Assembly (NCBI RefSeq): GCF_964188315.1
Contig: NC_135663.1
Coordinates: 124,001-188,000, forward strand
Reading direction: 5' to 3'
DNA from: Podarcis muralis
Lineage: Eukaryota
Length of the DNA stretch: 64,000 bases
This document shows positions 45,251 to 62,950 of this stretch, in pieces; within the stretch, counting starts at the first letter, position 1; each line of letters starts with the position of its first letter. The notes below the pieces were generated by a model that saw only the letters and a program-made list of their open reading frames with translations, had not been told where the DNA came from and did no database searches. The position numbers were made by a program, and so were the translations under genes.

Positions 45251-48134
45251 ATGGAGGCGCCCCGGGAAGACGCCCTGCAGAGTGAGTGGCCCTGGGCGGG
45301 AGGGGGGAGGGAGGGAGGAGAAGCGCGCTCCCGCGCCGGGTCCCTTGCGGGGCCAGACTGGGGTAGGGGCTCTGGGGCTCCCCCCCCCAGCAGCTGCAGC
45401 AGCATCCCCCAGGCGGTGGCGGGGGGCGGGATCCAGTTCGGCCCCTCTAACTGCCTCTTCCCGCCTGCCTGCCCGCTTCCTAGGCTCCTGGGTGGAGGTG
45501 CCCCCACTTGACCTGGAGGAGCCCCCCACGCCGGCCTGTGCGCCCCACCGCGACATGGAGCGGATCCTGCTGGAAGCGCAGCTGGAGATGGAGCCGCCGC
45601 GGGCCGAGGGGTAGGTGGTCGTGGGTAGATGACTCTTTCGTGGGCAGCGGGGTCGGCGGAACTCCTTGCAACTGGCTGTGAGCGCAGCAGGCGAAAGGGA
45701 GGCTCTGCGGTGGACAAGCGGGCGGCGGCTGCTAGCTCCGAAGGGCCGGGAAGCGACGACACCGGGGGGCGGCGGGAGAGCAAGCTTGGACTGCCGGGTC
45801 TCGGGTGAGGGGACGGCAGATCAGCCTCTCGGAGTCAGACAGGCGCTACTGGGCATCCCTGGCTCTTCGCTCCTTCCTTAACCCCTGCTCAGGGCTGCGT
45901 ACCCAGGGGGCGGCCCACTGCCTGGGGGAGGCCAGCTCTTCCTTCCAAGTCCTCCCGCGAGCCTGACTCGACTCCCCCCCCCCCCCCCGGCTATGGGGCT
46001 GCATGAGGGGCTCCTTAGGCTTTCACTGGAGTTGGCATAACTGCGCTCCTAAGCAAATTCCGGTCAGCTCCTTTGAATGCTAGGTAATTATTGCACGGAT
46101 GTTCCCTCAGGACTCGCGGTTCTCTTCCCTTCCCTTTTGGGATGCTCTGAAACGTCAAAGTTTGAACCAAATCGCCTCTCTTGAGATTTGTATTTCTGAA
46201 CTTCTCACTGAGAAATTGGAAAGTCTGGCTGATTTTCTTTGGGCTCCACCTTGCCACACGAACCTGAGGATGTGAACCCCACATCCTGCCATTATAAATG
46301 TACCAGAGCTGGAAGAATCATGGAATCACAGAATTGTAGAGTTAGAAGGGACCTCCAAGGCCCATCTAGTCCAACCCCCTGAAATGCAGGAATCTCAACA
46401 ACATGACTGATGCCATCCAACCTCTGCTTTACAATCTCCAAGGAAGGAGACTCCACCGCCTCCCTAGAGAGTCTGTTCCACTGTCAGCCAGCTCAGAAAG
46501 CTCTTCCTGGGGTTTAGTCACAAGGAGCCTTTGCTGTGTGGGCTCTGGTTTCTACAGCTGCTCCCCCAGAAAGACCGGCCTGGGAGTGGCCACCAGACGT
46601 CTTCCAGGGACTGCCACAGTCAGGACACACAAACCCCCTGCAAGGCTGACCTGGGCTTCTTCTGTGGGTGACAACTCGGCTCCCTTCTCCTGTCTGGGCT
46701 CCATTGGCCAGCCTCTTCACCTGCCCAGGAGGACAGGAGGCTCCTGCCTTCTGAAGGGCTCACCTGAGCATCCTGCAGGCTGTGGACAGGTCTGGCCTGG
46801 TAGAGATTTAGGTCCACTGAGGGCATCAGCCTCTCAAGGGCTTCACAGCAGCTTCTGAGCATGCTCACAAACAGCATGGCAGCAAAATCTCTCTTGTGCC
46901 TGAACACACAGACAGCGAGAGCAATTTCTCACCAGCAGATTCCATTTCTTGTGTTTCCAGCTCCTTCCGTGCACTGAAGGCGCCTGGTGTGGAGGACCTG
47001 AGCCCAGGGCAGGTGAGTGTCAACGCTGAGGTGTGCAAAGGAGCCACCTGGGCCATGGGCTTGTGGTCTTGTGGCCTCAGAATGAGAAGGCGCCAACCAA
47101 ACGGGGGTCTTGAAAGGTTTAATCTCAGGGGTCATTGTGGTGCCTGACCCATGAAGCACCTCAAGTTCCATAGACAAGGTGTGTTCACACCCACCCACAA
47201 GACATGCCCAGATGGTTGCCCAGGTGATATGCCCCCCTTCATCCTTAAAAAAAATTATGGGGTGCTGCACTTTCTCTTTGCAGAGGGAAGACGCTGAAGG
47301 GTCTGTCCAGCTGGGGACCCTGCCCTGGTCGTGGCCCAGCCCCCCTGAGCACCAAAAGTAAGGATGGCTCTTCACTGGCTTTCCCCGGGGGTCCTGGCTT
47401 CAGGCAGCCCCCCCAAAAACTCTCACCCCACTGCTTGCTCCACTTTGGACTCTGTCTGTCTGTCTCTCTGCAGGGAGCTGGCCTGCCTGCCCCCTGCGTG
47501 TGCCCCCCTGCTCAGCCCAGTTCTACACAGGAGGAGGGGGTTGCGGGACCCCCAGCTGCTGCTTCTGGTCATCCCCTCTCTGCTGCTCAGCCACGTCTTG
47601 GCCTTTGGCCTTGGGTGAGTCGGGGGGGGAGGGGGAGGCAACGAAGCAGGCACAGTTAGCGCCTCCAAACCTCTTGCCTGGACTCCTCTCTCACACACAG
47701 CAGTGGCCCACCAGCTGAGGAGAAATGGGATCGTGGCAAAACATGGGGATGGGGGTTGATTTTTCTCTCCCTTTACGGAAACACCCTTAATTCTGCCCAG
47801 TGCAGGCAGCCCCCTATAGTGTCTGTCTCCTCCCCCTCCCCTCCAAAACGTCTTGAGACCTGCGGTGAAGTCTCTGAGCACCTGGCTGGCTGCTGCAGAA
47901 GCGGATGCTGGATTAGATGGGACTCCTCTGGCCTGATCCAGCAGCCTCTTCTCATGTTCTTCTGCTGCTCAGAGCCTTCCTTGCCTCTCCCACTTGCCTG
48001 GAGGAGCGTAGCAAGAGAGGAGCTGAGGCCTGGCCTCTCCTGAGCAAGCCCCTCACTCACTGCCCTCTTCCTCTCCTCTCTCCAGCATTTGTATCGGGAA
48101 GCGTCTGGCTGCCTCCCCATCAAGCAGCCTGTGA
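45251..48134 (+). CDS. BNIP3/BNIP3L(NIX)-family paralog, 6 exons, 157 aa
   Basis: Exons 45251-45281, 45484-45610, 46961-47012, 47284-47357, 47474-47614, 48086-48134 total 474 nt, all GT-AG, phases 1,2,0,2,2. Protein MEAPREDALQSSWVEV...DMERILLEAQLE...LPWSWPSPPEHQKE...VIPSLLLSHVLAFGLGICIGKRLAASPSSSL versus BNIP3 SWVEL / DMEKILLDAQHE / WDWSSRPE / [29 protein letters not shown] at 48615-48620. Confidence 0.9.
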
Positions 48135-49368: not shown

Positions 49369-51269
49369 TATATTTATCCTTTAACTTTTGACACTCCATA
49401 GAGAGCCCGCACATCTCCTTGCCACCAGCAGAGGGTGCTGCAGACCAGCATTTGGCTTCTCCTGGCGCCTCCATGCTGGTCTGCAAGCCAAGCTTTCCTA
49501 ATCCTGACCTTGTTGCACAAGGCAAAACCGAGGGAAGGTTCCACTTGCCTCAGTGAGCCCAACATAGCCCACTCTGACTGGCAGCTCCTCCCTTCCCTGG
49601 CCTTGCTACTAGAGCTGCTTATCTGGACATGCATCCTTGGAAGCTGAAATCATAGCCAGAGATTTGGAACAGGCAGGAGAACGGACTTCACACAGCCCCT
49701 CGATAGACCTGTGGAACTCACTGCCACAAGAGGGAAAAGCCCACTTGGATGGCTTTAAACGAGGTTGTGGAAAAGAAGGCTAGGAATGGTCACTAGCTAC
49801 AATGGCCGTATCCTGCTTCCAGAATCAGAGGCAGAGGTCTCTCAATACCAGTTGCTGGGAATCACAAGGAATCAGAGTTTGGCTCTTGAGCTTCGGTTCT
49901 GCTTGTGGACTTCTTCCCATTGGCTGGCCACTGGCCTCATCCAGCAGGCTCTTCCTGGCCTCTGGGCACCCCCCAGCACCTTCCATAGCCCCACCTCTGG
50001 GACCGTGGGGGCTGACAGCCTCCCTGCCAAGCAGCTCAGTCTCTTCCTCACTGGATCCCTCCGTGGGGGGCAAAGGGGGCAGGCAGGACACAAGCTTCCT
50101 TGGCTGCTGCTGCTGCTGCTGCCCAGGCCCTTGAGATGCCCATCGGGGATGCCAAGCCCAGGGGTCAGGAGCCCACGTGGGCCTGGTTCCCTGCCAAGCC
50201 CAGGCCAAGCCCAGACCTCCAGCAGCCTCACTCTGTTGGGCCAGGAAGAGGTTGGAGGTTCGTACTCACCCTGAGGGCCTTGCGGGTGCAGGAAGGGACC
50301 CTCCCCAATCAAGACTGGCCATGGCAGATGAGGGCAAGGGGGTTGCCCCTCCCCTTTAGCTCCTCGGGGCCACCAGAAAGTGTCTCCTCACCCAGGCACT
50401 TGCCTCTGGACTTGATCCTCCGGCCAATCAATTTCACTGGGTGACGACAACCCATTTTTTTTCTAGCAGATGAGACAGAAGGGGAGGAATCTCTCCACTC
50501 CAGCTACAATTTTAAAAACTGCTGGTTAAATTCCCATGTGGGTCTTTGATTTTACACACTTTGCATCAGTTGTGGCCAAAATATTTCAGAGCTTGAAACA
50601 ATAAACCCAAATGTGGGGGTCACTTCCCCAACAGTCAGTATCTTATAATAAAGATCATTGGTTGAACTTTACTGGTGCCCCAATCCGGGTCCTGCAGTGC
50701 CCCCCCCCCTGCCAGGTGACTTGGAACAGCAGCATAGCTAGCCACTCAGGTGCCTGGGGTGGTGCGCACGCCCTGCAGCCGGGGGCAGAGCAAGCCGCCC
50801 ACGGGGATGGGGCGAGCTAAGACCCTCTCCACAGCCTCCTCTCAGCTGTAGGCTGGCTGAGGCGGTGGGCAGACGCAAGCCCTCGAAAAAGCAGTGTGGA
50901 GCTTGCAGGCAGTCCGCCCGCCGCCCCCCCCCTCAGGAAAGATGCGTGGCTCAGGCAGGCTGCAGGCCCCCCGGTGTGGCGCCCAGTGCCCCCCACCTCA
51001 CCCAGCTACCTGGGCTTCTGCAGTGGCGCAGGAAAGGGCGTGTGGTGGGTGCGGGAGTTATTTTTTGTCACCCCCCTCAGTGATGACACCTGGGGCGGAC
51101 CGCACCCCCTGCACCCCCCTTCCTCAGCCACAGAGTAGGAAGTTACATTGCTGCCAGGGGTGGGGAGGGGCTTGTGCTGATTCTGGGATAAAGCAGCCTT
51201 CCCGCCCCCCCCCCCCCCGAAGAAAGACTCTGAAGGAGAAGCAGTTTGAAAACAGGCGCCTCACAGGAG

Positions 51270-51275
51270 TTTATT
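51270..51275 (-). terminator. Poly(A) signal of the INSYN2-family gene
   Basis: AATAAA on the minus strand about 240 nt past the stop at 51515. Confidence 0.6.
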
Positions 51276-51514
51276 GAGACCTCCTCGGATACAGTGTGTG
51301 TGTCTTCCCTTCTCTCCCCCATCCTTTCATTGGGGGGGGGGGGTGCTCTGCAAGTTAAACTGGACAGATCTGAACAATAAAAAGGCTGGTGCAATCCCTC
51401 CATGCTGCGGCTCTGTGGCAGGTTGACTGGTGTGGACTGATGGGGGGAGGCAGCCCCCTCACCCCATGGCTCCTTGGGGAGGGAGACCCCCGGACCCTTC
51501 TGGGCACGGCACCA

Positions 51515-54500
51515 TCACAGGAACCAAAAACACTTTCGCCGGGACTTCTTGGCCTCCGCTTTCACCACGGGCAGATTCAGCGTTGGCGACGGCTCCTGGT
51601 GGCTTGGCGTGGCAGCTCGCGTGGCCACCGGGGGGCTGTGGCTCAGCTCAGGCTCAATGGTGCTCAGCACCTGCTGCAAACGCCCCTCCTGCTTCCGGAA
51701 ATCATGTTCCACGCTGCGGGGAGGCGGGGAGCAAGTCAGAGGGAGGCGTCTCCCAAGGAACCCCACTCAGCCAACGCTCGTGATTGGGGACAGAGATGGG
51801 GGTCTGGCTGGGCTGCCCCCATCCCTCCTGGGGGGCCGTGGGAGCTGGTGCAGAGGAGGCAGGTCAGCTGGCAGGAGCCTGGGGAGGCCGCCAATGGGAG
51901 CCCGTCTGCCTCCGCCGACCCTGGCATGTCTCACCCGTCGCCGCAGCGGCAGAGACAGACCCGTCAATCCCAATTAGCACTGATGCCTTGTGCGAAACAC
52001 ACAGGCAGGAGGCCAGAAGGAGCCGGCGGGCGGGCAGGCAGGCAGGCAGGCAGGCAGGGTGGCGGGGAGAGGAAGAGGGCCCAGTCCTGCCAGGGAGGCT
52101 CTGCACAGCCAGCCAGCCAGACCCCCCACCCCCAAAACAGCCTCCGAGGGTCAATGGAAACGTAGGGGAGGAACCCAGAGAAAAGGCTCCAAGGAGCAGA
52201 GGCTGCCGGTCTCTCCTTCCTTGGAGGTTTTTAAACGGAGGTCGGGAGGCCGTCTGCCAGGGATGCTTGCGGGGGGCTGGTCTAGAAGACCCTCAGGGGT
52301 CCCTTCCAACTCTACAAGTCCAGGATTCTTTGGTCTGTGGAAGATGTCTTCCTTGTGCCAAACAGCCCTCTAGGACTCTGATTCTATGGAACCCAGAGCG
52401 CAGCCCACCTCTGCCCCCGGCAAGGAACTGGCAGAGACACCCGCCTCTCCCTGGGCATGGAGGCCCTTTCACCATCCTGGCTCACAGCCCTCCTCTAACC
52501 CCTCCTTAACAAATTGTCCAGTAGCACCTTAGAGACCAACTCCGTTTGTTCTGGACAGAAACTTCCGTGTGCATGCACACTTCTTCAGGTAATAGAAAAC
52601 TTAGACCCAGAACAAACGGAGTTGGTCTCTAAGGTGCTACTGGACAATTTTTAAATTTATTTTGACTGCGTCAGACCAACATGGTTACCTACCCTCCTTA
52701 ACACCCACTGAAGCAAGGGGCACCATAGATAGATTGGTGCCCAGGGCTGGGGGGGGGGGGCTCCTGGCATCCCTCCCCAGCTTCAAGGCAGTGGGAGTCA
52801 TTGGCTGACTCAGCGTCCCAGGACTAAAGCGAGGGAGGAGCAGGGCCAGAGACGCAGCCTCTGTTCTCGTGCCATGCTGGGGGGGGGGGGCTGCCACTGC
52901 AGGGACTCTGTCCTCCTGAGAAACTCCGGCAGGAGCAGACAGGCTGTGGCGGCCTGTCATTCTTCGCAGGCACCCTTCATATCACGTCTGCCAGAAACGC
53001 TTGCCTCCGCTTCCCTCAAGAACGTGATTGGGGCAGGCAGGCAGGCGGGCGGGCATGGGAGCCCTTGCCAGCTCCCTTGGGACTTCTCCAGCACCCAAGA
53101 CCTCTGGCAGCCCCCAGGGCACCCTGAACCCAGCCCACCAGCATCCGGCTGGCCACTGCGAGAGCACGATGATGGACTAGGTGGTCCACTGGCCTGATCC
53201 AGCAGCCACACTCTTCTTGTGCCACCCAACTCTATGAATGTATGAAATGTCAGTGTCAAGAATCATAGAATTGGAGAGTTGGAGGGGACCTCAGGGGTCA
53301 TCTCGTTCAACCCCCTGCAATGCAGGAATCTCAGCTAAAGCATGCAAGACAGGTGGCCCTCCAAGCAAGGGCCCAGGTGTCTCTAAGCCGGACTGGGGGG
53401 CAGCCTCACCCCCTGCCCCTGTATCTGGTATTCAGAGGCAGAACACAGCCAATGGGGCTGGTAGCCATTTGCGGCTGTCAGCTCCATGGGTCGGGGCCCT
53501 GTGGGGCTGCCCCAGCCTTGCAGTCGTTTCTGGGGTATGGTCCAAGCTCCCCACAGGCCCTGCAGAGTCTGCTTCTGCCCCATTGCGCCCCCATCAAAAT
53601 CCACTGCCCCTGCAGTGCCAGGGAGCCCCAGGATCAGGCCCAGGGCTCACTTAGTCCAGCCTCCTGTTCTCACAGTGACCAGCCAGATGCCTTGGGAAAC
53701 CCACAAGCAGGATCCGGGCGCAAGAGCAGCCCTTCCTCCTCCTGCAACTGGCCCTCTGAAGCCTGGCCACCTCCAGGGAAGGGGCTCTGCTGGAGAAGTG
53801 GGTGGTCTGGGGGGGGGAGAAGGTGAGAGGAAAATCTGCTGGGCAGGGAGGAGAGCGGTCTGCCTGAGACCCAGCAGGACCCCCAGACTGGAAAGCAGCC
53901 AAAAGACGAAGGAGCTGGGTGGGCTTAGCCTGAAAGTGGGTTGATGGAGGTGGGGAGATGCTGGCCCTTTAGGGAGGGGGGGTCCTCTTCACCCCAGGCC
54001 AACGATGCAGCCTTCCTCTCTCTCCAGAGTCCCCTTTGCCCAGGGTCATCACATCAATAATACTGAACAGGCGTACATTTTATGTTGATGTGAAATGTGG
54101 AGGTCAGGAGCCGATGTCTGGGCTGCCGGTGGATCTGTGGCCGGCAGCCGAGAGCAGCCGAGGTGGGGGAAGCCAGGGGGCACCCCCAAACCCCACCCCA
54201 CCCCCGCTCCCAGGCCCCTCCTACCTGTAGATGATGCAGGCACAGTCCCGGCACGTCCCGCAGTTGGTGGTGTCCTGCCCTGTCCGGTAGGACTGCCGCC
54301 TGAAACGGAGCAGAAGGAGCCCATGAGCAGAAGGCCCAGGCGCCCCCTCCCTGCCTGGTCGCAGGGGCCCCCTTTGGTGCCAGGGGGGCACAAGCAGCAA
54401 TGCCCAAAGGGCATCTGGTCAAGCAGCAGGGACCAGGGGGAGGGGAAGCATCAGGGCTGGCTTGGGGGGCCAGGAGACCCCGGGAGGTCTCAGGGAGGGA

Positions 54501-56657
54501 AGCGCAAGGCAGGCAGCCAGGCCAGGACTCAGGCCTCACAGCGCAGAGGCCGCCCCAAGGCAAGGGGGCTGGCCCCACAGTGGCACTGCTTCGGCTTCCA
54601 AAGTGAGCAGGCACAGTGCCAGGCGATGCCAAGGCTGGCTTGTGGCCCGCAGAACCTGCTGCTGCCACCATAAAAATGCTCCATCATTTAAAGCGCAGTC
54701 AAACCAAAAGGTCGTGTTTTGCTGGACAGCTGAAGCTCCCAGCATTTCCCTGTGCGTTTGCTGGAGAGAACTCTGAGAGAGACAGTCCCACGGTGCCCAG
54801 GCGGGCAGAGGGCACAGCCATAGAGCTCTTCTCCTTGCCTGCCTGGGCACATGCTCTCGTTTTTGTCTCTTCATCCCCAAGCCAGAAATGGGAGAACAGC
54901 TGCGAAGTCTGAGCTCTAATGTTCAGACACCATTTTAAGCTAAACTGAAGTCTGCCTCTCAAATTGGCTCATTTGGCTGGAGCCTGGTGCTGAAAACAAA
55001 GGTCACAGGTTCGATCCCCGTATGGGATAGCTGCATATTCCTCCATTGCAGGGGGTTGGACTAGATGACCCTCAGGGTCCCTAGAGGCTCGACAAATTTT
55101 GTCTCTGTAACTGAATTACCATTTTAAGCCTGCCTGAATAAAGCTGCTGTTATTCTGCCTCAGAAACTCTGAGTAGATGTTATTTTTATCTCTTACAAGA
55201 CTGTTTGTGTGATTATTGTTTTAAAAGGGGGAAATATCAGGAGAATCCAGTCTGCCTTAAAACATCCTAGATTATTAAACGGAAAGGCTAAAACTCGCCC
55301 ATCTAAGCAGCCAAAGGGATCTCACTCTGCAGAACTCACAAGTGTGAGGAAGAAGAATATCTAATAAATATAGCCTCTCCTGGCATCTATGCAACATCCC
55401 TGGCTCCAAAGAGTCAAGGCGGCTCTAGCCTGGCCAGTGGGGGCTCCTTGGGCAACCCAGACCCCCCCCAGACCCGCCTCACCCATCTCGCTGCGCCTCC
55501 TTCTTCTCCAGATCCTGAATGACATCGAGTAGCACCTTGATGGTTCGTTGGCTGGTCTCCAGCACCCCCTCGAGGGACTGCAGCTGGGAGTGGATGTCAC
55601 CCACCCACCCGGGGAGGTCCTGAGATGCTGGCGGGGGCGCCCTCTGCGCGGCAGCCACAGACACCAGCTGCAGAAGGTGGTCCTGCCCGCGGGGAAACGT
55701 CTCCCCAGGTCCAGCGGAGAGGCAGGTCTCAGGGGGGCAGCTGCGACCGGAGGAGGGCAGAAGGGGGTCCGGAGGCTTCTGGGAAGGCGTGGGGGCTGGG
55801 GGGTGGGCCTGAGTGGTGCTGAGGCTCCCTGGGGAGGCTGCAGGCGCTGCTGGTTTTCCTGACTTAGGGGGCCCTGCTGTGGGAAGCAGGAAGGCAGAGG
55901 TGGGGTCTTCGGTGGGGAGGCCCTGAGCAAGGGGGCAGGGGGCAGGGATGCCCCTCTGGGGGGCACAGGGAGGGGCTCTCGAGGCCTGCTCAGAGGGGGG
56001 TGGGCACAGCCAGGGGGCGCCAGAGCTGCTGCAGCTGCTTGGTGTGCCATGGGGCTGCGTGGAGGAGGGGGCACAGTGCTTGCGCTGGGAAGAGCAGCTG
56101 GCCGAGAGACACGGGGCCCCCCGCCCCGGGTACGGGGGGCATATCCCCCGGGGAGCTGGCAGCCCGGGGCACAGGGTGGCAGGAAGTCTGGGGCACTGCT
56201 GGGCGTGGGGTAAGGCGAGGGAGCAACCAAGGGCAGGAAGGCTGGCGGTGCCCCCCAGGGGCGGATCCTGGCTGCGGCCCACTGCACAGGGCGCCCCCTC
56301 CTGGGCGAGGTCGCAGGAGCTCTTGCTGCGGGTGGGCCGCTGCAGGCTGGGTGACGTCTGGCTGGCGGTGCTGATGCCAGTCGCCCCGTGGGGATCCGGC
56401 AGGGCGAGCAGCAGGCGGGGCCCGGATTGGGGCCAGCTCCGCCTGGCGCAGTTTGCGGCAGAGGCACGTGGGAGGTGGCTGCCCAGGGGCTCCTCTTCGC
56501 CCTCCTCTAGGTCCTTGAAGCGCACCTGCTGGGCGCGGTGGCGGCGGCGCTGCAGGCGGTCCTCAGCACCCGGCGAGTCGCGCTTGAGCAGCACGGAGCG
56601 GACCCCGGTGACAGCCTTCTCTTGCCCGGCCTCCGGGGCTGCCTCCTGGCTGGCCAT
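51515..56657 (-). CDS. INSYN2/FAM196-family paralog (INSYN2B-like), 3 coding exons, 482 aa
   Basis: Exons 56657-55483, 54299-54225, 51713-51515 (phase 2-2, GT-AG); ATG in GCTGCCATGG; 5' UTR acceptor at 57077. Motifs [87 protein letters not shown] match recalled INSYN2A/B. Confidence 0.9.
52511..52691. mobile_element. Second Penelope-like remnant: 44-bp perfect inverted repeat with 11-bp TSD, opposite orientation to the 49.2 kb copy
   Basis: Arms 52511-52554 and 52607-52650; CCCTCCTTAAC at 52500-52510 and 52692-52702; hammerhead core degenerate (GAAA changed to GGAA). Confidence 0.8.
54960..55081 (+). mobile_element. tRNA-derived SINE with CR1-type tail (POM/Squam1-like)
   Basis: A-box-like TGGCTGGAG, B-box GGTTCGATCCC (55008-55018), then the same cattgcagggggttggactagatgaccctcagggtccc tail found throughout the window. 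Confidence 0.75.
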
Positions 56658-59600
56658 GGCAGCCCCTTTGCCCCGCCAGGGGGGCGTCACAGCCTCCTGC
56701 CCCGCATGACCGCAAGCCGTTCCCCAGAAAGCGTCGATTCGGCTGCCCCCTCGGTCGGGGCGCAAAGCATCTCTCCCGTGGGTCCTGCTGCCTGGGGCTC
56801 AGCCTCAGCGACTCCCAAGGGGGCAGCCGGTGCCTCATGGCTGGAGGAGGCCTGGCCTTTGCCCCCCAGCCGGCAGGAACCCCATGGCCTGCTCTCCCCC
56901 CTCCCCCCTCTCTAGGGTCCGTCCCTGGCCTCTGAGGGCCTCTCTCTGGGCCGGGAGAAGGGAGGGGGGAGAAGGGAGCCCATCCTGCTCACGGCTGCTG
57001 CTTCCGCTTCCCGAGGGTCGGTCACTTGTGGGGCCAGCAGGCACAGCGCCAGCCCATAGCCTCCCTGGGCAACGGACCTGCAGAGAGAAGAGAGGAGATG
57101 AATGGGTGGAAACCCGTTCCAGTTATAGTCCACACTACAACCAGGGCTAAGAAAAAGTAATACAGGAGTAATGAAAATAAGAGAAGTGTTGAGCTGCAAG
57201 AGACCCTCAAAGGACGTCCAGTCCAACCCCCTGCGATGCAATGCAGGAATCCCTGACTTGTCCTATAAACTGGCCTTAACGCAGAGCAGATGGGGAGTCA
57301 TAAGAAGCAGCCTTGCTAGCCCAGGCTCACATCAAGTGGCCCAGGAGCCGAGGAGAGAGGAGAGTCTGCAGCTGGGTGAGGCTACCAGAGTGGGGCCTCC
57401 TAGTCCAGCACCCTGTTCCCCTCTGGCCAACCAGATGCCCTCAAAGGGAAGCCCTGAGAGCAGCAGCCCTCTTCCACTCTTGTTCTCCACCTTTCTAAGA
57501 TAGACTGATGCTATCCATGGAGGCTCCACTTAGGAATCACAAGAACCTAAAGGGAGCTCTGTAGGAAGAAGCCCTTTAGGAAGAACCTAAAGGGAGCTCT
57601 GTAGCAGCTGGATCAGGCCACTAAAGGGGCTGACCATTAAAGAGCAGCTGTGGGGGTGGGGGGTTGCATCAGAGTAGGGCTGAGGGGGGAGGGCTTAACC
57701 CTTTCCTTTCCATTCACTTTTCTTCTGAAATAACTCCCCAAGCCTGTCACCCACCCATCCCACCCAAGGTCTGGTGAAACAGACATTTGTGGAGGACGAG
57801 AGGGCGATCGATTGAGGGCCACTAGCCAGGATGCCGTGCTCTGCCTCCACAGTCGGAATCCAGTGGCAGGAGGGGAGCGCTGCCATGTGCTCAGCTCCTG
57901 CCTGGGGGGTTCCCACAGGTCGGCCCCTGTGAGGACAGGATGCTGGACTCGATGGGCCCCCGGCCTGACCCAGCAGGCTCTTCTGGTGTTCTTAAAGCCC
58001 CTCCCAAACGTGCCCAGTTTCCTTCCGGAGGCTCCCACAACCCCCTCTGCCACGTGGCCACCCCCTAAAAACACCCCTCTCCTGTCCCTCTGCCACCTCC
58101 AGTCTCAGGCAGGATCACAAAACACAAAGCGACAAGCTCTGGTCTTTGGTGCTGCTGCTGCTGCCTCTGTTTGGAGAGAGAGGGGGGGGAGAGAGGGAGA
58201 GGGAAAGGGGGGGGGAGAGAAGGGGCCCTTCAGCGTAAACAGGCCAGGAACGCCAGCCAGGCAGAAGCCACAGCTAAGAATAGCAGCCTGGCCTTCATGG
58301 GGAGCAGGAAGAGGAGAGGAGGATGAGAAGCCGTCCCACACACCCACCGCCTGTGTCGGCCTCCAAGAGGAGCATCAGGGAGGGGACACCCCCAAAGAGC
58401 CTTTGCTGTGCCCCCTCAAACCGACCAGGGGATCCATCTCCCAGCCCAGAGGCAGGAGGCGGCCACAGCCTCTCTTTGCCACAGAGAGCATTCCCCGGCT
58501 GGCGTCCCTTTCCCCCCGCCACTCAGTTTCCCAGCTGACCTCCAAGTGGCTGTGCCGGGGGGGGGGGAGGCACCTTTGGGAACTGGGGGGAGAAAGCAAA
58601 AGGTAGCAAGCCTGTGAACATTTTACATGGTTGCCATTATTATCAATGGCTCAATGGTCCCAGGATATAGAATGACAGAAAGGTCATCCAGACCAGCCCC
58701 CCCCCCTTGCAGGAATCACAACTGATGCCATGATTCTGACAAATGTCCATCTGACCTCTGCTTAAAAACTGACAACAAAGGAAAGGAAGGTTACAGCCAC
58801 TTAAAAATGCAGTATTGAAAAGAGTTTAAGATGAATTACTGTGGGATCTAGGTATCTACCTTCAACAGAGAGCCAGTGGTTAGTGCTGGACTGGGACCTG
58901 GGAGAGACTAGGGTTTGAATCCCTCCTCAGCCAGGAAACTCCTTGGGGGATCTTAGGGGTCCGTCAATGCTCCTCTCAGCCTGACCTCCCTCACAGGGTT
59001 GTTGTGGGGATTAAATGAGGAAGGGAGAGCCATGCACCTGCCCTCCTGAGCTCCTTGTAGAAAAAGGTGGGGTGGAGATTCAATACAGAAATTAAACCCC
59101 AGGTGTCATCGAGGGCAGAGTAAATGGTGTGTCTTCAGCATGCAATGGAACCTGTCCCACAGGACTGTCAGGTGCCATGAAAACAGGATGGCGGACTCGA
59201 TGGCCGCTGGCCTGATCCAGCAGAGCTCTAAGAAGGCCTAAAGAAGGTGCCAGGAGCCCCCTCTGTAAGGTGGGAATTCCCAGAGAGCCAAAGGAGAGCC
59301 CTTTAGCCGGGGGGGGGGGGGAGCCCCCAAAGCCGTGCCCTGTGCACAACACTCTCCCTTCCTGCAGCCGACTTGGCAGAGAGGAGGGAGAAGGAAGGGC
59401 AGGAGGGGTGTCCCAGGCAGGCCAATGCCTCCTGGCAAGAGGGCCAGGCCAGAAGAGCCCCCTTCTGCCCAGCTGCAGTGCCTCCCCCCCCCCACTGTGC
59501 CATCACTTCTCCCCAGCAGGAAGGGAGTTGCCAGCTCAGCACAGCCGCCCAGACTTTCTCCCGCACTGCTAACAAGCAAAGTTTCCAACTGCTGAGCGAG

Positions 59601-61899: not shown

Positions 61900-62950
61900 G
61901 GCGCCTTACTGTCTCTTTCAAAGGGTTTTTGGGGGGTGGAGGCAATCTAACCCCCCACAGGCGCCACAGACTGGCCCCCCACCCGCTTCCAAGGGCTTCC
62001 GCCGCCCCCCATTCCGCTTGCGCGCCCAGCCGCCGCGCCGCGACCCAGAAAGGCGTTGGTTCGCAGCATCCGCCCGGCCGAGGCAGCAGCCACGGCTCCG
62101 TAGCAGGGGGTGCGTGTGTGAGTAAGTGGAGTAGCCAAGCCGAGGCTTGGTCCACCTAGCTCAGCCTTCTCGACACGGGCTGGCAGCAGCGGCTCTCTTC
62201 CGGGGAAGCCAGGCCGGCGAAGCCATTCGCATGCGAGCCTTCTGCATGCCGAGCAGCTGCCCTGGCGCGGAAGAGGGGATGCCTCCCCCCCCCCCCCATG
62301 GCAGCCACAAAAAAGACCCCTTTTGCCAATCCCGCGCCCTCCCATCCGGATCCCCTCCGTCCCCGCTGCGCGCCCCTTGCCTGCCTGCCTGCTCGCTCTC
62401 CGGCGAGAGGGTCCTCCGGCCGCGAGGAGGACGAGCCGCCGCCGCCGCCGAAGCGCTCGGCCGAGAGAGGCGGAGCCGGGGCGGACTGGCGGGCGGGGGG
62501 CGTCGCGCCTTCCCGGGAGAGCGACCGGCGCTCCGCCGCCGCCGCCGCTGCCTCCTCCCTGGGCCCGGCCACGCGGCCACGTGCGCGACACCGAGAGGAG
62601 CCCCGGCAGCAGCTGCACGTCGTCGCGGGGATGCTCCACGGTTGGCCCTGGCTCGGGAGAAGACGCCTCCGAGCATGTGCAGAGGGCGTGGCGCCCCCCC
62701 CCCCCGGGCTTAGCCGGTGGGGCTTCCTGGCAGGATTGGCCCTCTTGGGGGGCTGGGGGTTGCTGCTGCTTCTGTTCCCCCACCCCGGCCGGATTTGGAC
62801 CCCACCCCCCGCCCTGGGGCTCACGGGCCTGAGCCGATGAAGCCCCCGCTGCCCCTCGGGGCTGCCTCGTTCCGAAGGTTGGAAGGCCCCTTTCCAGCCG
62901 AGGTCCCAACAAGGGCCGGGCCAGTGTGTGGCCTGGGGCAATCTCTAAGA
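61900..62950 (-). promoter_or_regulatory. CpG island, candidate promoter / non-coding first exon of the INSYN2-family gene
   Basis: CpG-dense block upstream of the gene on the minus strand, with a consensus donor (GTAAGG at 61910-61905) facing the acceptor at 57077. No recognisable protein in its ORFs. Confidence 0.45.

What the first reader, a model, noticed from the sequence alone, without database searches (positions are those of the whole stretch)
51515..57077. Free-standing third INSYN2/FAM196 paralog without a DOCK host gene
Seen: a complete 482-aa gene with the family architecture (one large exon, a 75-nt exon, a terminal exon) and conserved N-terminal QQVRFKD, coiled-coil TIKVLLDVIQDLEK and YRTGQD..C..C..ACIIYSVE blocks, closest to INSYN2B. 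Established: human INSYN2A and INSYN2B are nested in introns of DOCK1 and DOCK2, and INSYN2A is an inhibitory-synapse protein. Seen: no DOCK-like exons here, and a plus-strand DOCK host is implausible because AUP1 and the BNIP3-like gene sit immediately upstream on that strand. Inference: a nested ohnolog that outlived its host gene and was lost in mammals.
Basis: partly seen in the sequence, partly recalled or inferred. Interest (0 to 1): 0.8.

Follow-up and report, generated by a model that had tools for sequence, protein, structure and literature searches.

The report
Third INSYN2 gene without DOCK host
The wall lizard has an expressed third member of the INSYN2 synapse-protein family that mammals lack, and it stands alone in lizards although its counterparts in turtles, birds and skates still sit inside a DOCK gene.

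Summary
The minus strand carries a three-exon gene with CDS at 55483-56657, 54225-54299 and 51515-51713. It encodes 482 aa, identical to RefSeq "uncharacterized protein LOC114604513" of Podarcis muralis. RNA contigs and stranded reads show both predicted splice joints.

Phylogeny (57 proteins) gives three fully supported clades:
- INSYN2A.
- INSYN2B.
- A third clade ("C") with squamates, birds, turtles, salamanders, a caecilian, lungfish, gar, paddlefish, teleosts and cartilaginous fishes. No mammal was found in it.

Birds, turtles, salamanders, paddlefish and rays have both B and C, so the gene is not a moved INSYN2B (AU test p = 0.008).

In skate, turtle and hawk the C gene lies antisense inside a full-length DOCK gene. 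It sits in the same intron that holds INSYN2B in DOCK2. In Podarcis, Pogona and Elgaria no DOCK gene spans it, and a BNIP3-family gene lies a few kb beyond its 3' end in the first two.

The host was lost in squamates, not everywhere. That host is probably a fourth DOCK-A gene missing from mammals; this rests on chromosome assignments, not on a DOCK tree.

The synaptic function is inferred from homology only. I could not check whether P. muralis itself has INSYN2A and INSYN2B.

The parts
55483..56657 (-). Exon 1, coding part (codons 1-391 plus 2 nt). It holds the N-terminal motifs, a long Pro/Ser-rich region and the start of the coiled coil.
   Evidence: ORF and splice donor; Pfam FAM196; continuous RNA contig coverage.
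56658..57077 (-). 5' UTR part of exon 1. The RNA contig runs at least 64 nt beyond 57077.
   Evidence: X1 and X5 contigs are colinear from 55482 to 57077 and continue past the laid stretch (table 8).
54300..55482 (-). Intron 1 (1183 nt, GT-AG). It contains a tRNA-like SINE at about 54990-55085.
   Evidence: Joint 'skips 1183' in X1, X5, X23 and X21; sequence.
54225..54299 (-). Exon 2, 75 nt. It encodes the RQSYRTGQD..NCGTCRDCACIIY block.
   Evidence: Pfam FAM196 E 4e-11; covered by spliced contigs.
51714..54224 (-). Intron 2 (2511 nt, GT-AG).
   Evidence: Joint 'skips 2511' in X1 and X5 contigs.
51515..51713 (-). Exon 3, coding part including the stop. It holds the second helix, a variable linker and the polybasic KKSRRKCFWFL tail.
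51248..51514 (-). 3' UTR with AATAAA at 51270-51275.
   Evidence: RNA contigs end at 51245-51297; sequence.
45251..48134 (+). It occupies the side where the 5' half of a DOCK host would lie.
Evidence: The transmembrane exon hits Pfam BNIP3 weakly, below the Pfam cutoff (E 0.024). The same neighbour is annotated in Pogona with 61-79% identical exons.

Best explanation
This is the wall-lizard copy of a third, old branch of the FAM196/INSYN2 family, called INSYN2C here. It is distinct from INSYN2A (nested in DOCK1) and INSYN2B (nested in DOCK2).

Shown:
- The gene is intact, spliced and transcribed.
- Its clade spans cartilaginous fishes to sauropsids, and no mammal was found in it.
- In skate, turtle and hawk the orthologue lies antisense inside one intron of a full-length DOCK gene. 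This is the intron just after the exon that encodes the '..HIQ..LL..NR.VI..' stretch of the TPR region. INSYN2B occupies the same intron in DOCK2.
- In three lizard families the gene stands alone near a chromosome end. In two of them (Podarcis, Pogona) a BNIP3-family gene lies a few kb beyond its 3' end.

Inferred:
- The guest-in-host arrangement predates the split of the paralogues and was copied with them.
- The host of C is a fourth DOCK-A gene in the AUP1/LOXL3 (human 2p13-type) region.
- Squamates lost that host, at least its 5' half, but kept the guest. Mammals lost both.

Likely mode of action, by homology only: a neuronal scaffold like InSyn2 of the inhibitory postsynaptic density. The protein has short conserved N-terminal motifs and a fast-evolving disordered Pro/Ser-rich middle. 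Its strongly conserved C-terminal module is two long helices, probably for oligomerisation, with the second helix carrying a Cys cluster. The tail is polybasic and ends in Cys-Phe-Trp-Phe-Leu. It may attach the protein to membrane through lipidation of the Cys.
For: - Gene model and identity with RefSeq.
- Expression and splicing.
- Three clades with full support, each following the species tree. AU rejection of INSYN2B membership.
- Clade names anchored by koala, ostrich and teleost INSYN2A, and by marsupial, frog, salamander, coelacanth, bird, turtle, gharial, tuatara and gecko INSYN2B.
- B and C in the same species (Grus, Apteryx, Pelodiscus, Ambystoma, Polyodon, Hemitrygon).
- C nested in a DOCK gene. 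B nested in a DOCK gene. Same intron: with Pfam TPR_DOCK hits.
- The hawk C-host exon is only 51% identical to the crane DOCK2 exon.
- Free-standing in Podarcis, Pogona and Elgaria. No DOCK exon in the window flanks.
- Chromosomes: bird C lies on 65-96 Mb chromosomes in most chromosome-level assemblies and bird B on 16-27 Mb in most. Chicken DOCK1 with FAM196A is on chr6 and DOCK5 on chr22 (PMC6135963, Table S3). Chicken DOCK2 is on chr13 and AUP1/HTRA2/LOXL3 on chr4 (PMC2446394).
- Constraint: the C-terminal 123 aa are 77-78% identical to bird and turtle copies against about 40% for the rest. Among listed variants there are 12 synonymous and 14 non-synonymous changes (pN/pS about 0.4), none in the helical module.
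- Two-helix model with pLDDT up to 93.
- InSyn2 as an inhibitory postsynaptic density protein: PMC10913824.
Against: - The host DOCK of clade C was never classified by sequence. Only one short exon of it could be read, and it does not discriminate between DOCK paralogues.
- Adjacency of that host to AUP1 or BNIP3L2 in birds and turtles was not seen directly.
- Only 7 kb of window lies on the side where the 3' half of a host would be. Only the longer stop-free pieces were scanned, so remnants or a displaced host elsewhere in the lizard genome are not excluded.
- P. muralis INSYN2A and INSYN2B were not retrieved.
- Tissue of expression is unknown because the run labels are coded.
- No experiment links any C-clade protein to synapses.
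- The structure model has low overall confidence (pTM 0.33).
Confidence: 0.75

Rival explanations
1. The gene is this genome's INSYN2B orthologue, moved out of DOCK2.
For: Many sources name clade-C proteins 'INSYN2B' or 'INSYN2B-like'. BLAST scores to B are slightly higher than to A. P. muralis's own INSYN2B was not retrieved.
Against: Clades B and C are separate with full support, and the AU test rejects squamate C joining B (p 0.008). A true INSYN2B exists in gecko, tuatara, turtles, gharial and birds. In the crane it lies in DOCK2 on another chromosome from C.
Confidence: 0.02
2. The host of clade C in birds, turtles and skates is DOCK5 (or another known DOCK), not a fourth DOCK-A. In that case a rearrangement took the lizard gene out of a host that still exists elsewhere in the genome.
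For: The one readable host exon finds human DOCK5 as its only PDB match, though weakly (E 0.3). DOCK5 is linked to the 2p13 genes MTHFD2 and SLC4A5 in elephant shark, gar and chicken (PMC6135963). Known vertebrate DOCK-A genes number three (own knowledge).
Against: The DOCK2 exon of Lates also finds only DOCK5 in the PDB, so that hit does not discriminate. Chicken DOCK5 is on the small chr22 (PMC6135963, Table S3). Bird C genes lie on 65-96 Mb chromosomes in most chromosome-level assemblies, and chicken AUP1/HTRA2/LOXL3 are on chr4 (PMC2446394). The hawk and turtle host exons are only 72% alike, which is low for a conserved DOCK5.
Confidence: 0.15
3. A DOCK host still spans the gene in P. muralis but is unannotated or has its exons outside the window.
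For: Only 7 kb of window lies on the 3'-half side, and hawk and turtle have no DOCK exon within 10 kb on that side either. Not every short stop-free piece was scanned.
Against: The 5'-half side holds the BNIP3-family gene, AUP1, HTRA2 and LOXL3 (earlier notes). The flanking DOCK exon, found 3-8 kb from the guest in hawk, turtle, crane and Lates, is absent from the window and from Pogona and Elgaria. None of the 30 pieces scanned hit a DOCK Pfam family, while all four control exons did. Three independent lizard annotations call no spanning gene.
Confidence: 0.05
4. The gene is a decaying relic, transcribed but no longer functional.
For: The N-terminal two thirds evolve fast (47% identity to Elgaria). 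14 of the 26 listed coding variants are non-synonymous. The host and the mammalian copies were lost.
Against: The 482-codon frame is intact and the splice sites are canonical. The mRNA is spliced, at contig depths of 30-76. The C-terminal module keeps every column that is invariant across the family alignment. The variant list contains no change in the helical module. The same architecture is kept in all squamates sampled.
Confidence: 0.05

Closest known systems
INSYN2A / FAM196A (InSyn2)
   Same: Same Pfam family (PF15265). It shares the N-terminal ..QVRFKD and STxxQTSP motifs, a long disordered middle, the TIKVLL.VIQ.LEK helix, the YRTGQD..NC..C...ACIIYSVE block and a hydrophobic WFL end. 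It is nested antisense in a DOCK-A gene, DOCK1, in human, chicken and elephant shark (PMC6135963, Table S3).
   Different: It is a separate clade (100/100). A has three Cys in the block (C..TC.NSAC) where C has four (CGTCRDCAC). A lacks the tail Cys (RWR-LWFL). A is present in mammals. The lizard C gene has no host.
INSYN2B / FAM196B
   Same: Same family and same module order. It shares the polybasic tail with Cys-Phe-Trp (KKCFWWI in B, KCFWFL in C). It is nested antisense in the same DOCK intron as C, within DOCK2, in Lates and crane. It gives slightly higher BLAST scores than A.
   Different: It is a separate clade (100/99), and the AU test rejects merging. It co-exists with C in six sampled species. 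C-terminal identity to P0001 is about 45-55%, against 61-78% with non-lacertid members of clade C. It lies on a different chromosome in birds.
BNIP3L2 (third BNIP3/NIX branch), the adjacent gene
   Same: It is also a third paralogue kept in sauropsids and fishes, with no mammalian copy found (note s1-188833). It is linked to INSYN2C in Podarcis and Pogona.
   Different: It is an unrelated protein family. It was never a nested gene, as far as was seen.

Membership tests
FAM196 / INSYN2 family (Pfam PF15265) | Significant match to the family profile. | tested here: met
   Exon 1 scores 62.7 bits (E 6e-17) and exon 2 scores 43.6 bits (E 4e-11), against a cut-off of 27. All homologues carry PF15265.
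FAM196 / INSYN2 family (Pfam PF15265) | Conserved motifs: N-terminal QVRFKD, the TIKVLL.VIQ.LEK helix, and the YRTGQD..NC..C...ACIIYSVE.DF..QE block. | tested here: met
   P0001 has the family residue at all 25 columns that are invariant across the 55 sequences of the C-terminal alignment, which includes P0001. The N-terminal motif aligns with A, B and C members.
FAM196 / INSYN2 family (Pfam PF15265) | Gene structure: one large coding exon, a 75-nt exon and a terminal exon. | tested here: met
   Exons of 1175, 75 and 199 coding nt with GT-AG introns, confirmed by RNA joints. The structure of other members was not examined exon by exon.
FAM196 / INSYN2 family (Pfam PF15265) | Nested antisense in an intron of a DOCK-A gene. 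| tested here: not met
   No spanning gene and no DOCK exon in this window or in two other lizards. The feature is met by the orthologues in skate, turtle and hawk. It is a feature of genomic context, not of the protein.
FAM196 / INSYN2 family (Pfam PF15265) | Localisation and function at the inhibitory postsynaptic density (shown for InSyn2/INSYN2A only). | not testable with these tools
   Background only, from PMC10913824. The tissue of the RNA runs is coded.
INSYN2B orthologue group | Groups with mammalian INSYN2B in a family tree. | tested here: not met
   It falls in clade C (100/98). Holding squamate C together with B costs 40 lnL units, p-AU 0.008.
INSYN2B orthologue group | Lies inside DOCK2. 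| tested here: not met
   It is free-standing next to AUP1 and the BNIP3-family gene. The crane's INSYN2B is in DOCK2 on a 22-Mb chromosome, while its C gene is on an 83-Mb one.
Third clade (INSYN2C, unnamed in the literature searched) | Groups with the 'INSYN2B-like' genes of birds, turtles, salamanders, ray-finned and cartilaginous fishes, and shares their signature (EGVLETSQ, DLEKKEA.RDGR, CGTCRDCAC, KCFWFL). | tested here: met
   C-terminal identity is 61-93% within the clade, against about 50% to A and B.

The most novel reading that the evidence does not exclude
Non-mammalian jawed vertebrates (skates, turtles, birds) keep a fourth DOCK-A family exchange factor that mammals and squamates have lost. 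It would be the fourth duplicate beside DOCK1, DOCK2 and DOCK5, in the AUP1/LOXL3 (human 2p13-type) region. It still carries its own nested INSYN2 gene in the ancestral intron. The INSYN2/DOCK guest-host pair would then predate the vertebrate genome duplications and have been copied as a unit. Afterwards each lineage lost the guest (DOCK5), the host (squamates, perch) or both (mammals).
Probability: 0.6. Interest if true: 0.6.

Novelty: new member of a known kind. Interest (0 to 1): 0.5.

Why it matters
INSYN2A is one of the few newly found components of the inhibitory postsynaptic density, and its family is treated as having two members. A third, ancient member that mammals lack widens the family. 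It also defines the conserved core: two helices, a Cys cluster and a lipidation-like tail. It gives chick, turtle, lizard and fish models an extra gene to consider when knocking out INSYN2 genes.

The locus is also a clean case for how nested genes evolve. The same guest sits in the same intron of different DOCK paralogues. Among close relatives, the guest survives with its host in turtles and birds, and without it in lizards. If the host proves to be a fourth DOCK-A gene, that adds a Rac exchange factor unknown from mammalian work.

Tried and rejected
- **Classifying the C host through its one readable exon.** I searched it against PDB sequences. The exon matches DOCK5 weakly, but so does a DOCK2 exon, so the hit does not discriminate.
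- **Looking for more DOCK exons.** I compared all stop-free pieces between loci. Only the one flanking exon lies within the 10-kb flanks, and the skate intron is longer than 109 kb with none.
- **Failed look-ups.** Two look-ups found nothing because the proteins were minor isoforms (Anolis and Hemicordylus).
- **Earlier notes of this scan.** They hold nothing on INSYN2 or DOCK genes in this genome.
- **Literature.** No paper on a third INSYN2 or a fourth DOCK-A was found.
- **BNIP3 exons.** I searched for them beside the hawk, turtle and Elgaria genes and found none within 10 kb.
- **Structure.** The AlphaFold model of the C-terminal 145 aa gave two confident helices but pTM 0.33, so I ran no fold search.
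- **A zinc-knuckle reading of the Cys cluster.** I consider this unlikely because the Cys residues lie on a predicted helix.
- **The midpoint-rooted 'A+C versus B' grouping.** I did not use it. With three clades and only a long-branch lamprey sequence, the root is not known.
- An early count used exon 2 shifted by one base. This was corrected. It does not affect the variants counted, which all lie in exons 1 and 3.


Full report
**What is there**

The minus strand between 51.2 and 57.1 kb carries a three-exon gene. The coding parts are 55483-56657, 54225-54299 (75 nt) and 51515-51713. Both introns are GT-AG, and the start codon sits in a GCCATGG context.

The spliced translation is 482 aa and is identical to P0001, which NCBI lists as "uncharacterized protein LOC114604513 [Podarcis muralis]". 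The window corresponds to positions 124001-188000 of an 83.7-Mb chromosome record, so the gene lies about 0.18 Mb from a chromosome end. Pfam FAM196 matches exon 1 and exon 2 well above the cut-off.

**Is it expressed?**

Yes.
- Contigs of two runs from different studies (X1, X5) carry both predicted joints, 51713>54225 and 54299>55483.
- One 2142-nt contig covers the 3' UTR, exon 3, exon 2, exon 1 and more than 480 nt of 5' UTR.
- Raw stranded RNA-seq reads (X23) cross the exon 1-exon 2 joint. They cover exon 1 only in the orientation expected for a minus-strand mRNA.
- The contigs end just after an AATAAA at 51270-51275.
- The tissue is unknown because run labels are coded.

**What family branch is it?**

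A search with the conserved C-terminus returned a block of proteins 61-93% identical. They come from squamates, birds, turtles, a caecilian, salamanders, lungfish, gar, paddlefish, teleosts, sharks, rays and a chimaera. Below them there is a clear step down to teleost "protein INSYN2B" at about 50%. No mammal, frog or crocodilian was in the block.

An exhaustive search of 1.8 billion representatives found only 158 family members. Cluster look-ups and a further search anchored the other two branches:
- INSYN2A: koala, ostrich, teleosts.
- INSYN2B: marsupials, a rodent, frogs, salamanders, coelacanth, rays, paddlefish, teleosts, and also birds, turtles, gharial, tuatara and a gecko.

A careful maximum-likelihood tree of 57 proteins over 486 columns gives A 100/100, B 100/99 and C 100/98. 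Each is monophyletic in all 200 bootstrap trees examined and broadly follows the species tree. Holding the eight squamate C genes together with clade B costs 40 log-likelihood units, p-AU 0.008.

Six species carry both B and C: crane, kiwi, softshell turtle, axolotl, paddlefish and a stingray. The gene is therefore not a displaced INSYN2B. The tree is unrooted in effect, because the only outgroup-like sequence is a long-branch lamprey protein. It cannot say whether C is nearer to A or to B. Raw BLAST scores favour B only slightly.

**The host question**

The context look-ups gave the main new result.

Clade C nested antisense in a full-length DOCK gene (DOCK_N, C2, TPR and all three DHR-2 lobes):

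| Species | Host length |
|---|---|
| Skate (Amblyraja) | 1886 aa |
| Turtle (Carettochelys) | 1836 aa |
| Hawk (Accipiter) | 1834 aa |

INSYN2B nested the same way:

| Species | Host length |
|---|---|
| Lates | 1842 aa |
| Stingray (Hemitrygon) | 1821 aa |
| Crane (Grus), on a 22-Mb chromosome | 1834 aa |

In hawk, turtle, crane and Lates, one DOCK exon lies 2-8 kb beyond the 3' end of the guest, on the opposite strand. It matches Pfam TPR_DOCK positions about 268-302 in all four. B and C therefore occupy the same intron of their hosts, which argues that the nest is older than the split between them. The hawk host exon is only 51% identical to the crane DOCK2 exon, so the C host is not DOCK2.

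In lizards the picture differs:
- No gene is called across the C gene in Podarcis, Pogona or Elgaria.
- All three loci lie 0.2-0.3 Mb from a chromosome end.
- In Podarcis and Pogona a BNIP3-family gene lies tail-to-tail a few kb away, on the side where the 5' half of the host would be.
- The flanking DOCK exon is absent from the window and from the Pogona and Elgaria loci.
- None of the 30 stop-free plus-strand pieces scanned on either side of the gene hit a DOCK Pfam family, whereas all four control exons did.

A perch copy is also free-standing.

**Which DOCK is the host?**

This step is inferred.
- Chicken DOCK1 with FAM196A inside it is on chr6, and DOCK5 is on chr22 at 0.84-0.92 Mb (PMC6135963, Table S3).
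- Chicken DOCK2 is on chr13 beside TLX3, and AUP1, HTRA2 and LOXL3 are on chr4 (PMC2446394).
- In most chromosome-level bird assemblies the C genes lie on chromosomes of 65-96 Mb, and the B genes mostly on ones of 16-27 Mb.

The C host therefore seems to be none of the three known DOCK-A genes. It would be a fourth one in the AUP1/LOXL3 region. That region is the fourth member of the LBX/TLX paralogy group, whose other members hold DOCK1, DOCK2 and DOCK5.

I could not read more than one exon of this host. That exon does not discriminate between paralogues. I give 0.6 to a fourth DOCK-A and 0.15 to DOCK5 or another known gene.

**The protein**

Alignments show short conserved N-terminal motifs and a Pro/Ser-rich middle that evolves fast (about 40-50% identity outside lacertids). 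The C-terminal 120-130 residues are strongly conserved.

AlphaFold, run with a 55-sequence alignment, predicts two long helices at residues 350-390 and 406-436. pLDDT reaches 93 on the first. A disordered linker and the tail KKSRRKCFWFL follow.

Clade C has four Cys in the block CGTCRDCAC, while A and B have three. B, C and lamprey keep the tail Cys, and A does not.

Variants between the reference and two RNA data sets give 12 synonymous and 14 non-synonymous changes among those listed. None falls in the helical module. This count is rough because the list was truncated.

By homology with InSyn2, a candidate scaffold of the inhibitory postsynaptic density (PMC10913824), I propose an oligomerising scaffold tethered to membrane by its basic, possibly lipidated tail. 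Nothing here tests that.

**Novelty and limits**

The gene model is already in RefSeq, and its relatives are auto-named "INSYN2B-like", "INSYN2B", "FAM196A-like" or even "basic proline-rich protein-like". Full-text searches found no paper that recognises a third INSYN2 branch or a fourth DOCK-A gene.

Not done:
- P. muralis INSYN2A and INSYN2B were not retrieved.
- The host was not placed in a DOCK tree.
- Gene order around the host in birds and turtles was not seen.
- Absence from mammals, frogs and crocodilians rests on annotated proteins only.

Two earlier notes of this scan, on the same window, had flagged the adjacent BNIP3-family gene and the pair of genes after AUP1. They agree with what I found.

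Noticed in passing
L006:24922-25029 (hawk), L005:36430-36537 (turtle); whole loci L002, L005, L006: The DOCK gene that hosts the C-clade gene in hawk, turtle and skate looks like a fourth DOCK-A gene that mammals lack. Its one visible exon is only 72% identical between hawk and turtle. It scores lower against Pfam TPR_DOCK (14-16 bits) than the matching DOCK2 exons (24-27 bits), which suggests fast evolution.
   Followed up: partly
window 54990-55085, 52296-52320, 53308-53340: A tRNA-like SINE in intron 1 and two other short repeats reach very high depth in all RNA runs, with many chimeric joints to other places. They are transcribed dispersed repeats and not part of the gene's mRNA.
   Followed up: no
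P0001 residues 472-482 and the aligned tails of family members: The C-terminal tail is polybasic and ends in Cys-Phe-Trp-[Phe/Trp]-[Leu/Ile] in clades B and C and in lamprey. Clade A has Arg-Trp-Arg/Lys-Leu-Trp-Phe-Leu with no Cys. A lipid anchor would therefore be possible for B and C but not for A.
   Followed up: no
window 62100-62950: A GC-rich block has long open frames on both strands (up to 335 aa) and no Pfam match on the plus strand. It may be a CpG island or the first exon of the next gene.
   Followed up: partly
window 45251-48134 and L008:22399-24922: The BNIP3-family neighbour has an LIR-like WVEV motif and a conserved transmembrane exon. It is linked tail-to-tail to the C gene in Podarcis and Pogona. 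It was not found within 10 kb in Elgaria, hawk or turtle.
   Followed up: partly
proteins P0181, P0185, P0200, P0222, P0238 and others: Many family representatives are 1000-1488 aa long, with the FAM196 module at the very end. Their species were not looked up and they were not placed in the tree. The four shorter long forms that were placed (P0188, P0192, P0197, P0199; 923-1079 aa) fall among teleost clade-C genes.
   Followed up: no
P0229 (lamprey): Lampreys have a FAM196 gene that groups with clade A (95/78), but on a very long branch. It cannot serve as a reliable root.
   Followed up: no
window 51297-57077 compared with run X5: The X5 transcript differs from the reference at about 1.8% of positions. 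It also has small indels in both UTRs (6 nt at 56890, 3 nt at 51342). This suggests a divergent lineage under the same species label.
   Followed up: no
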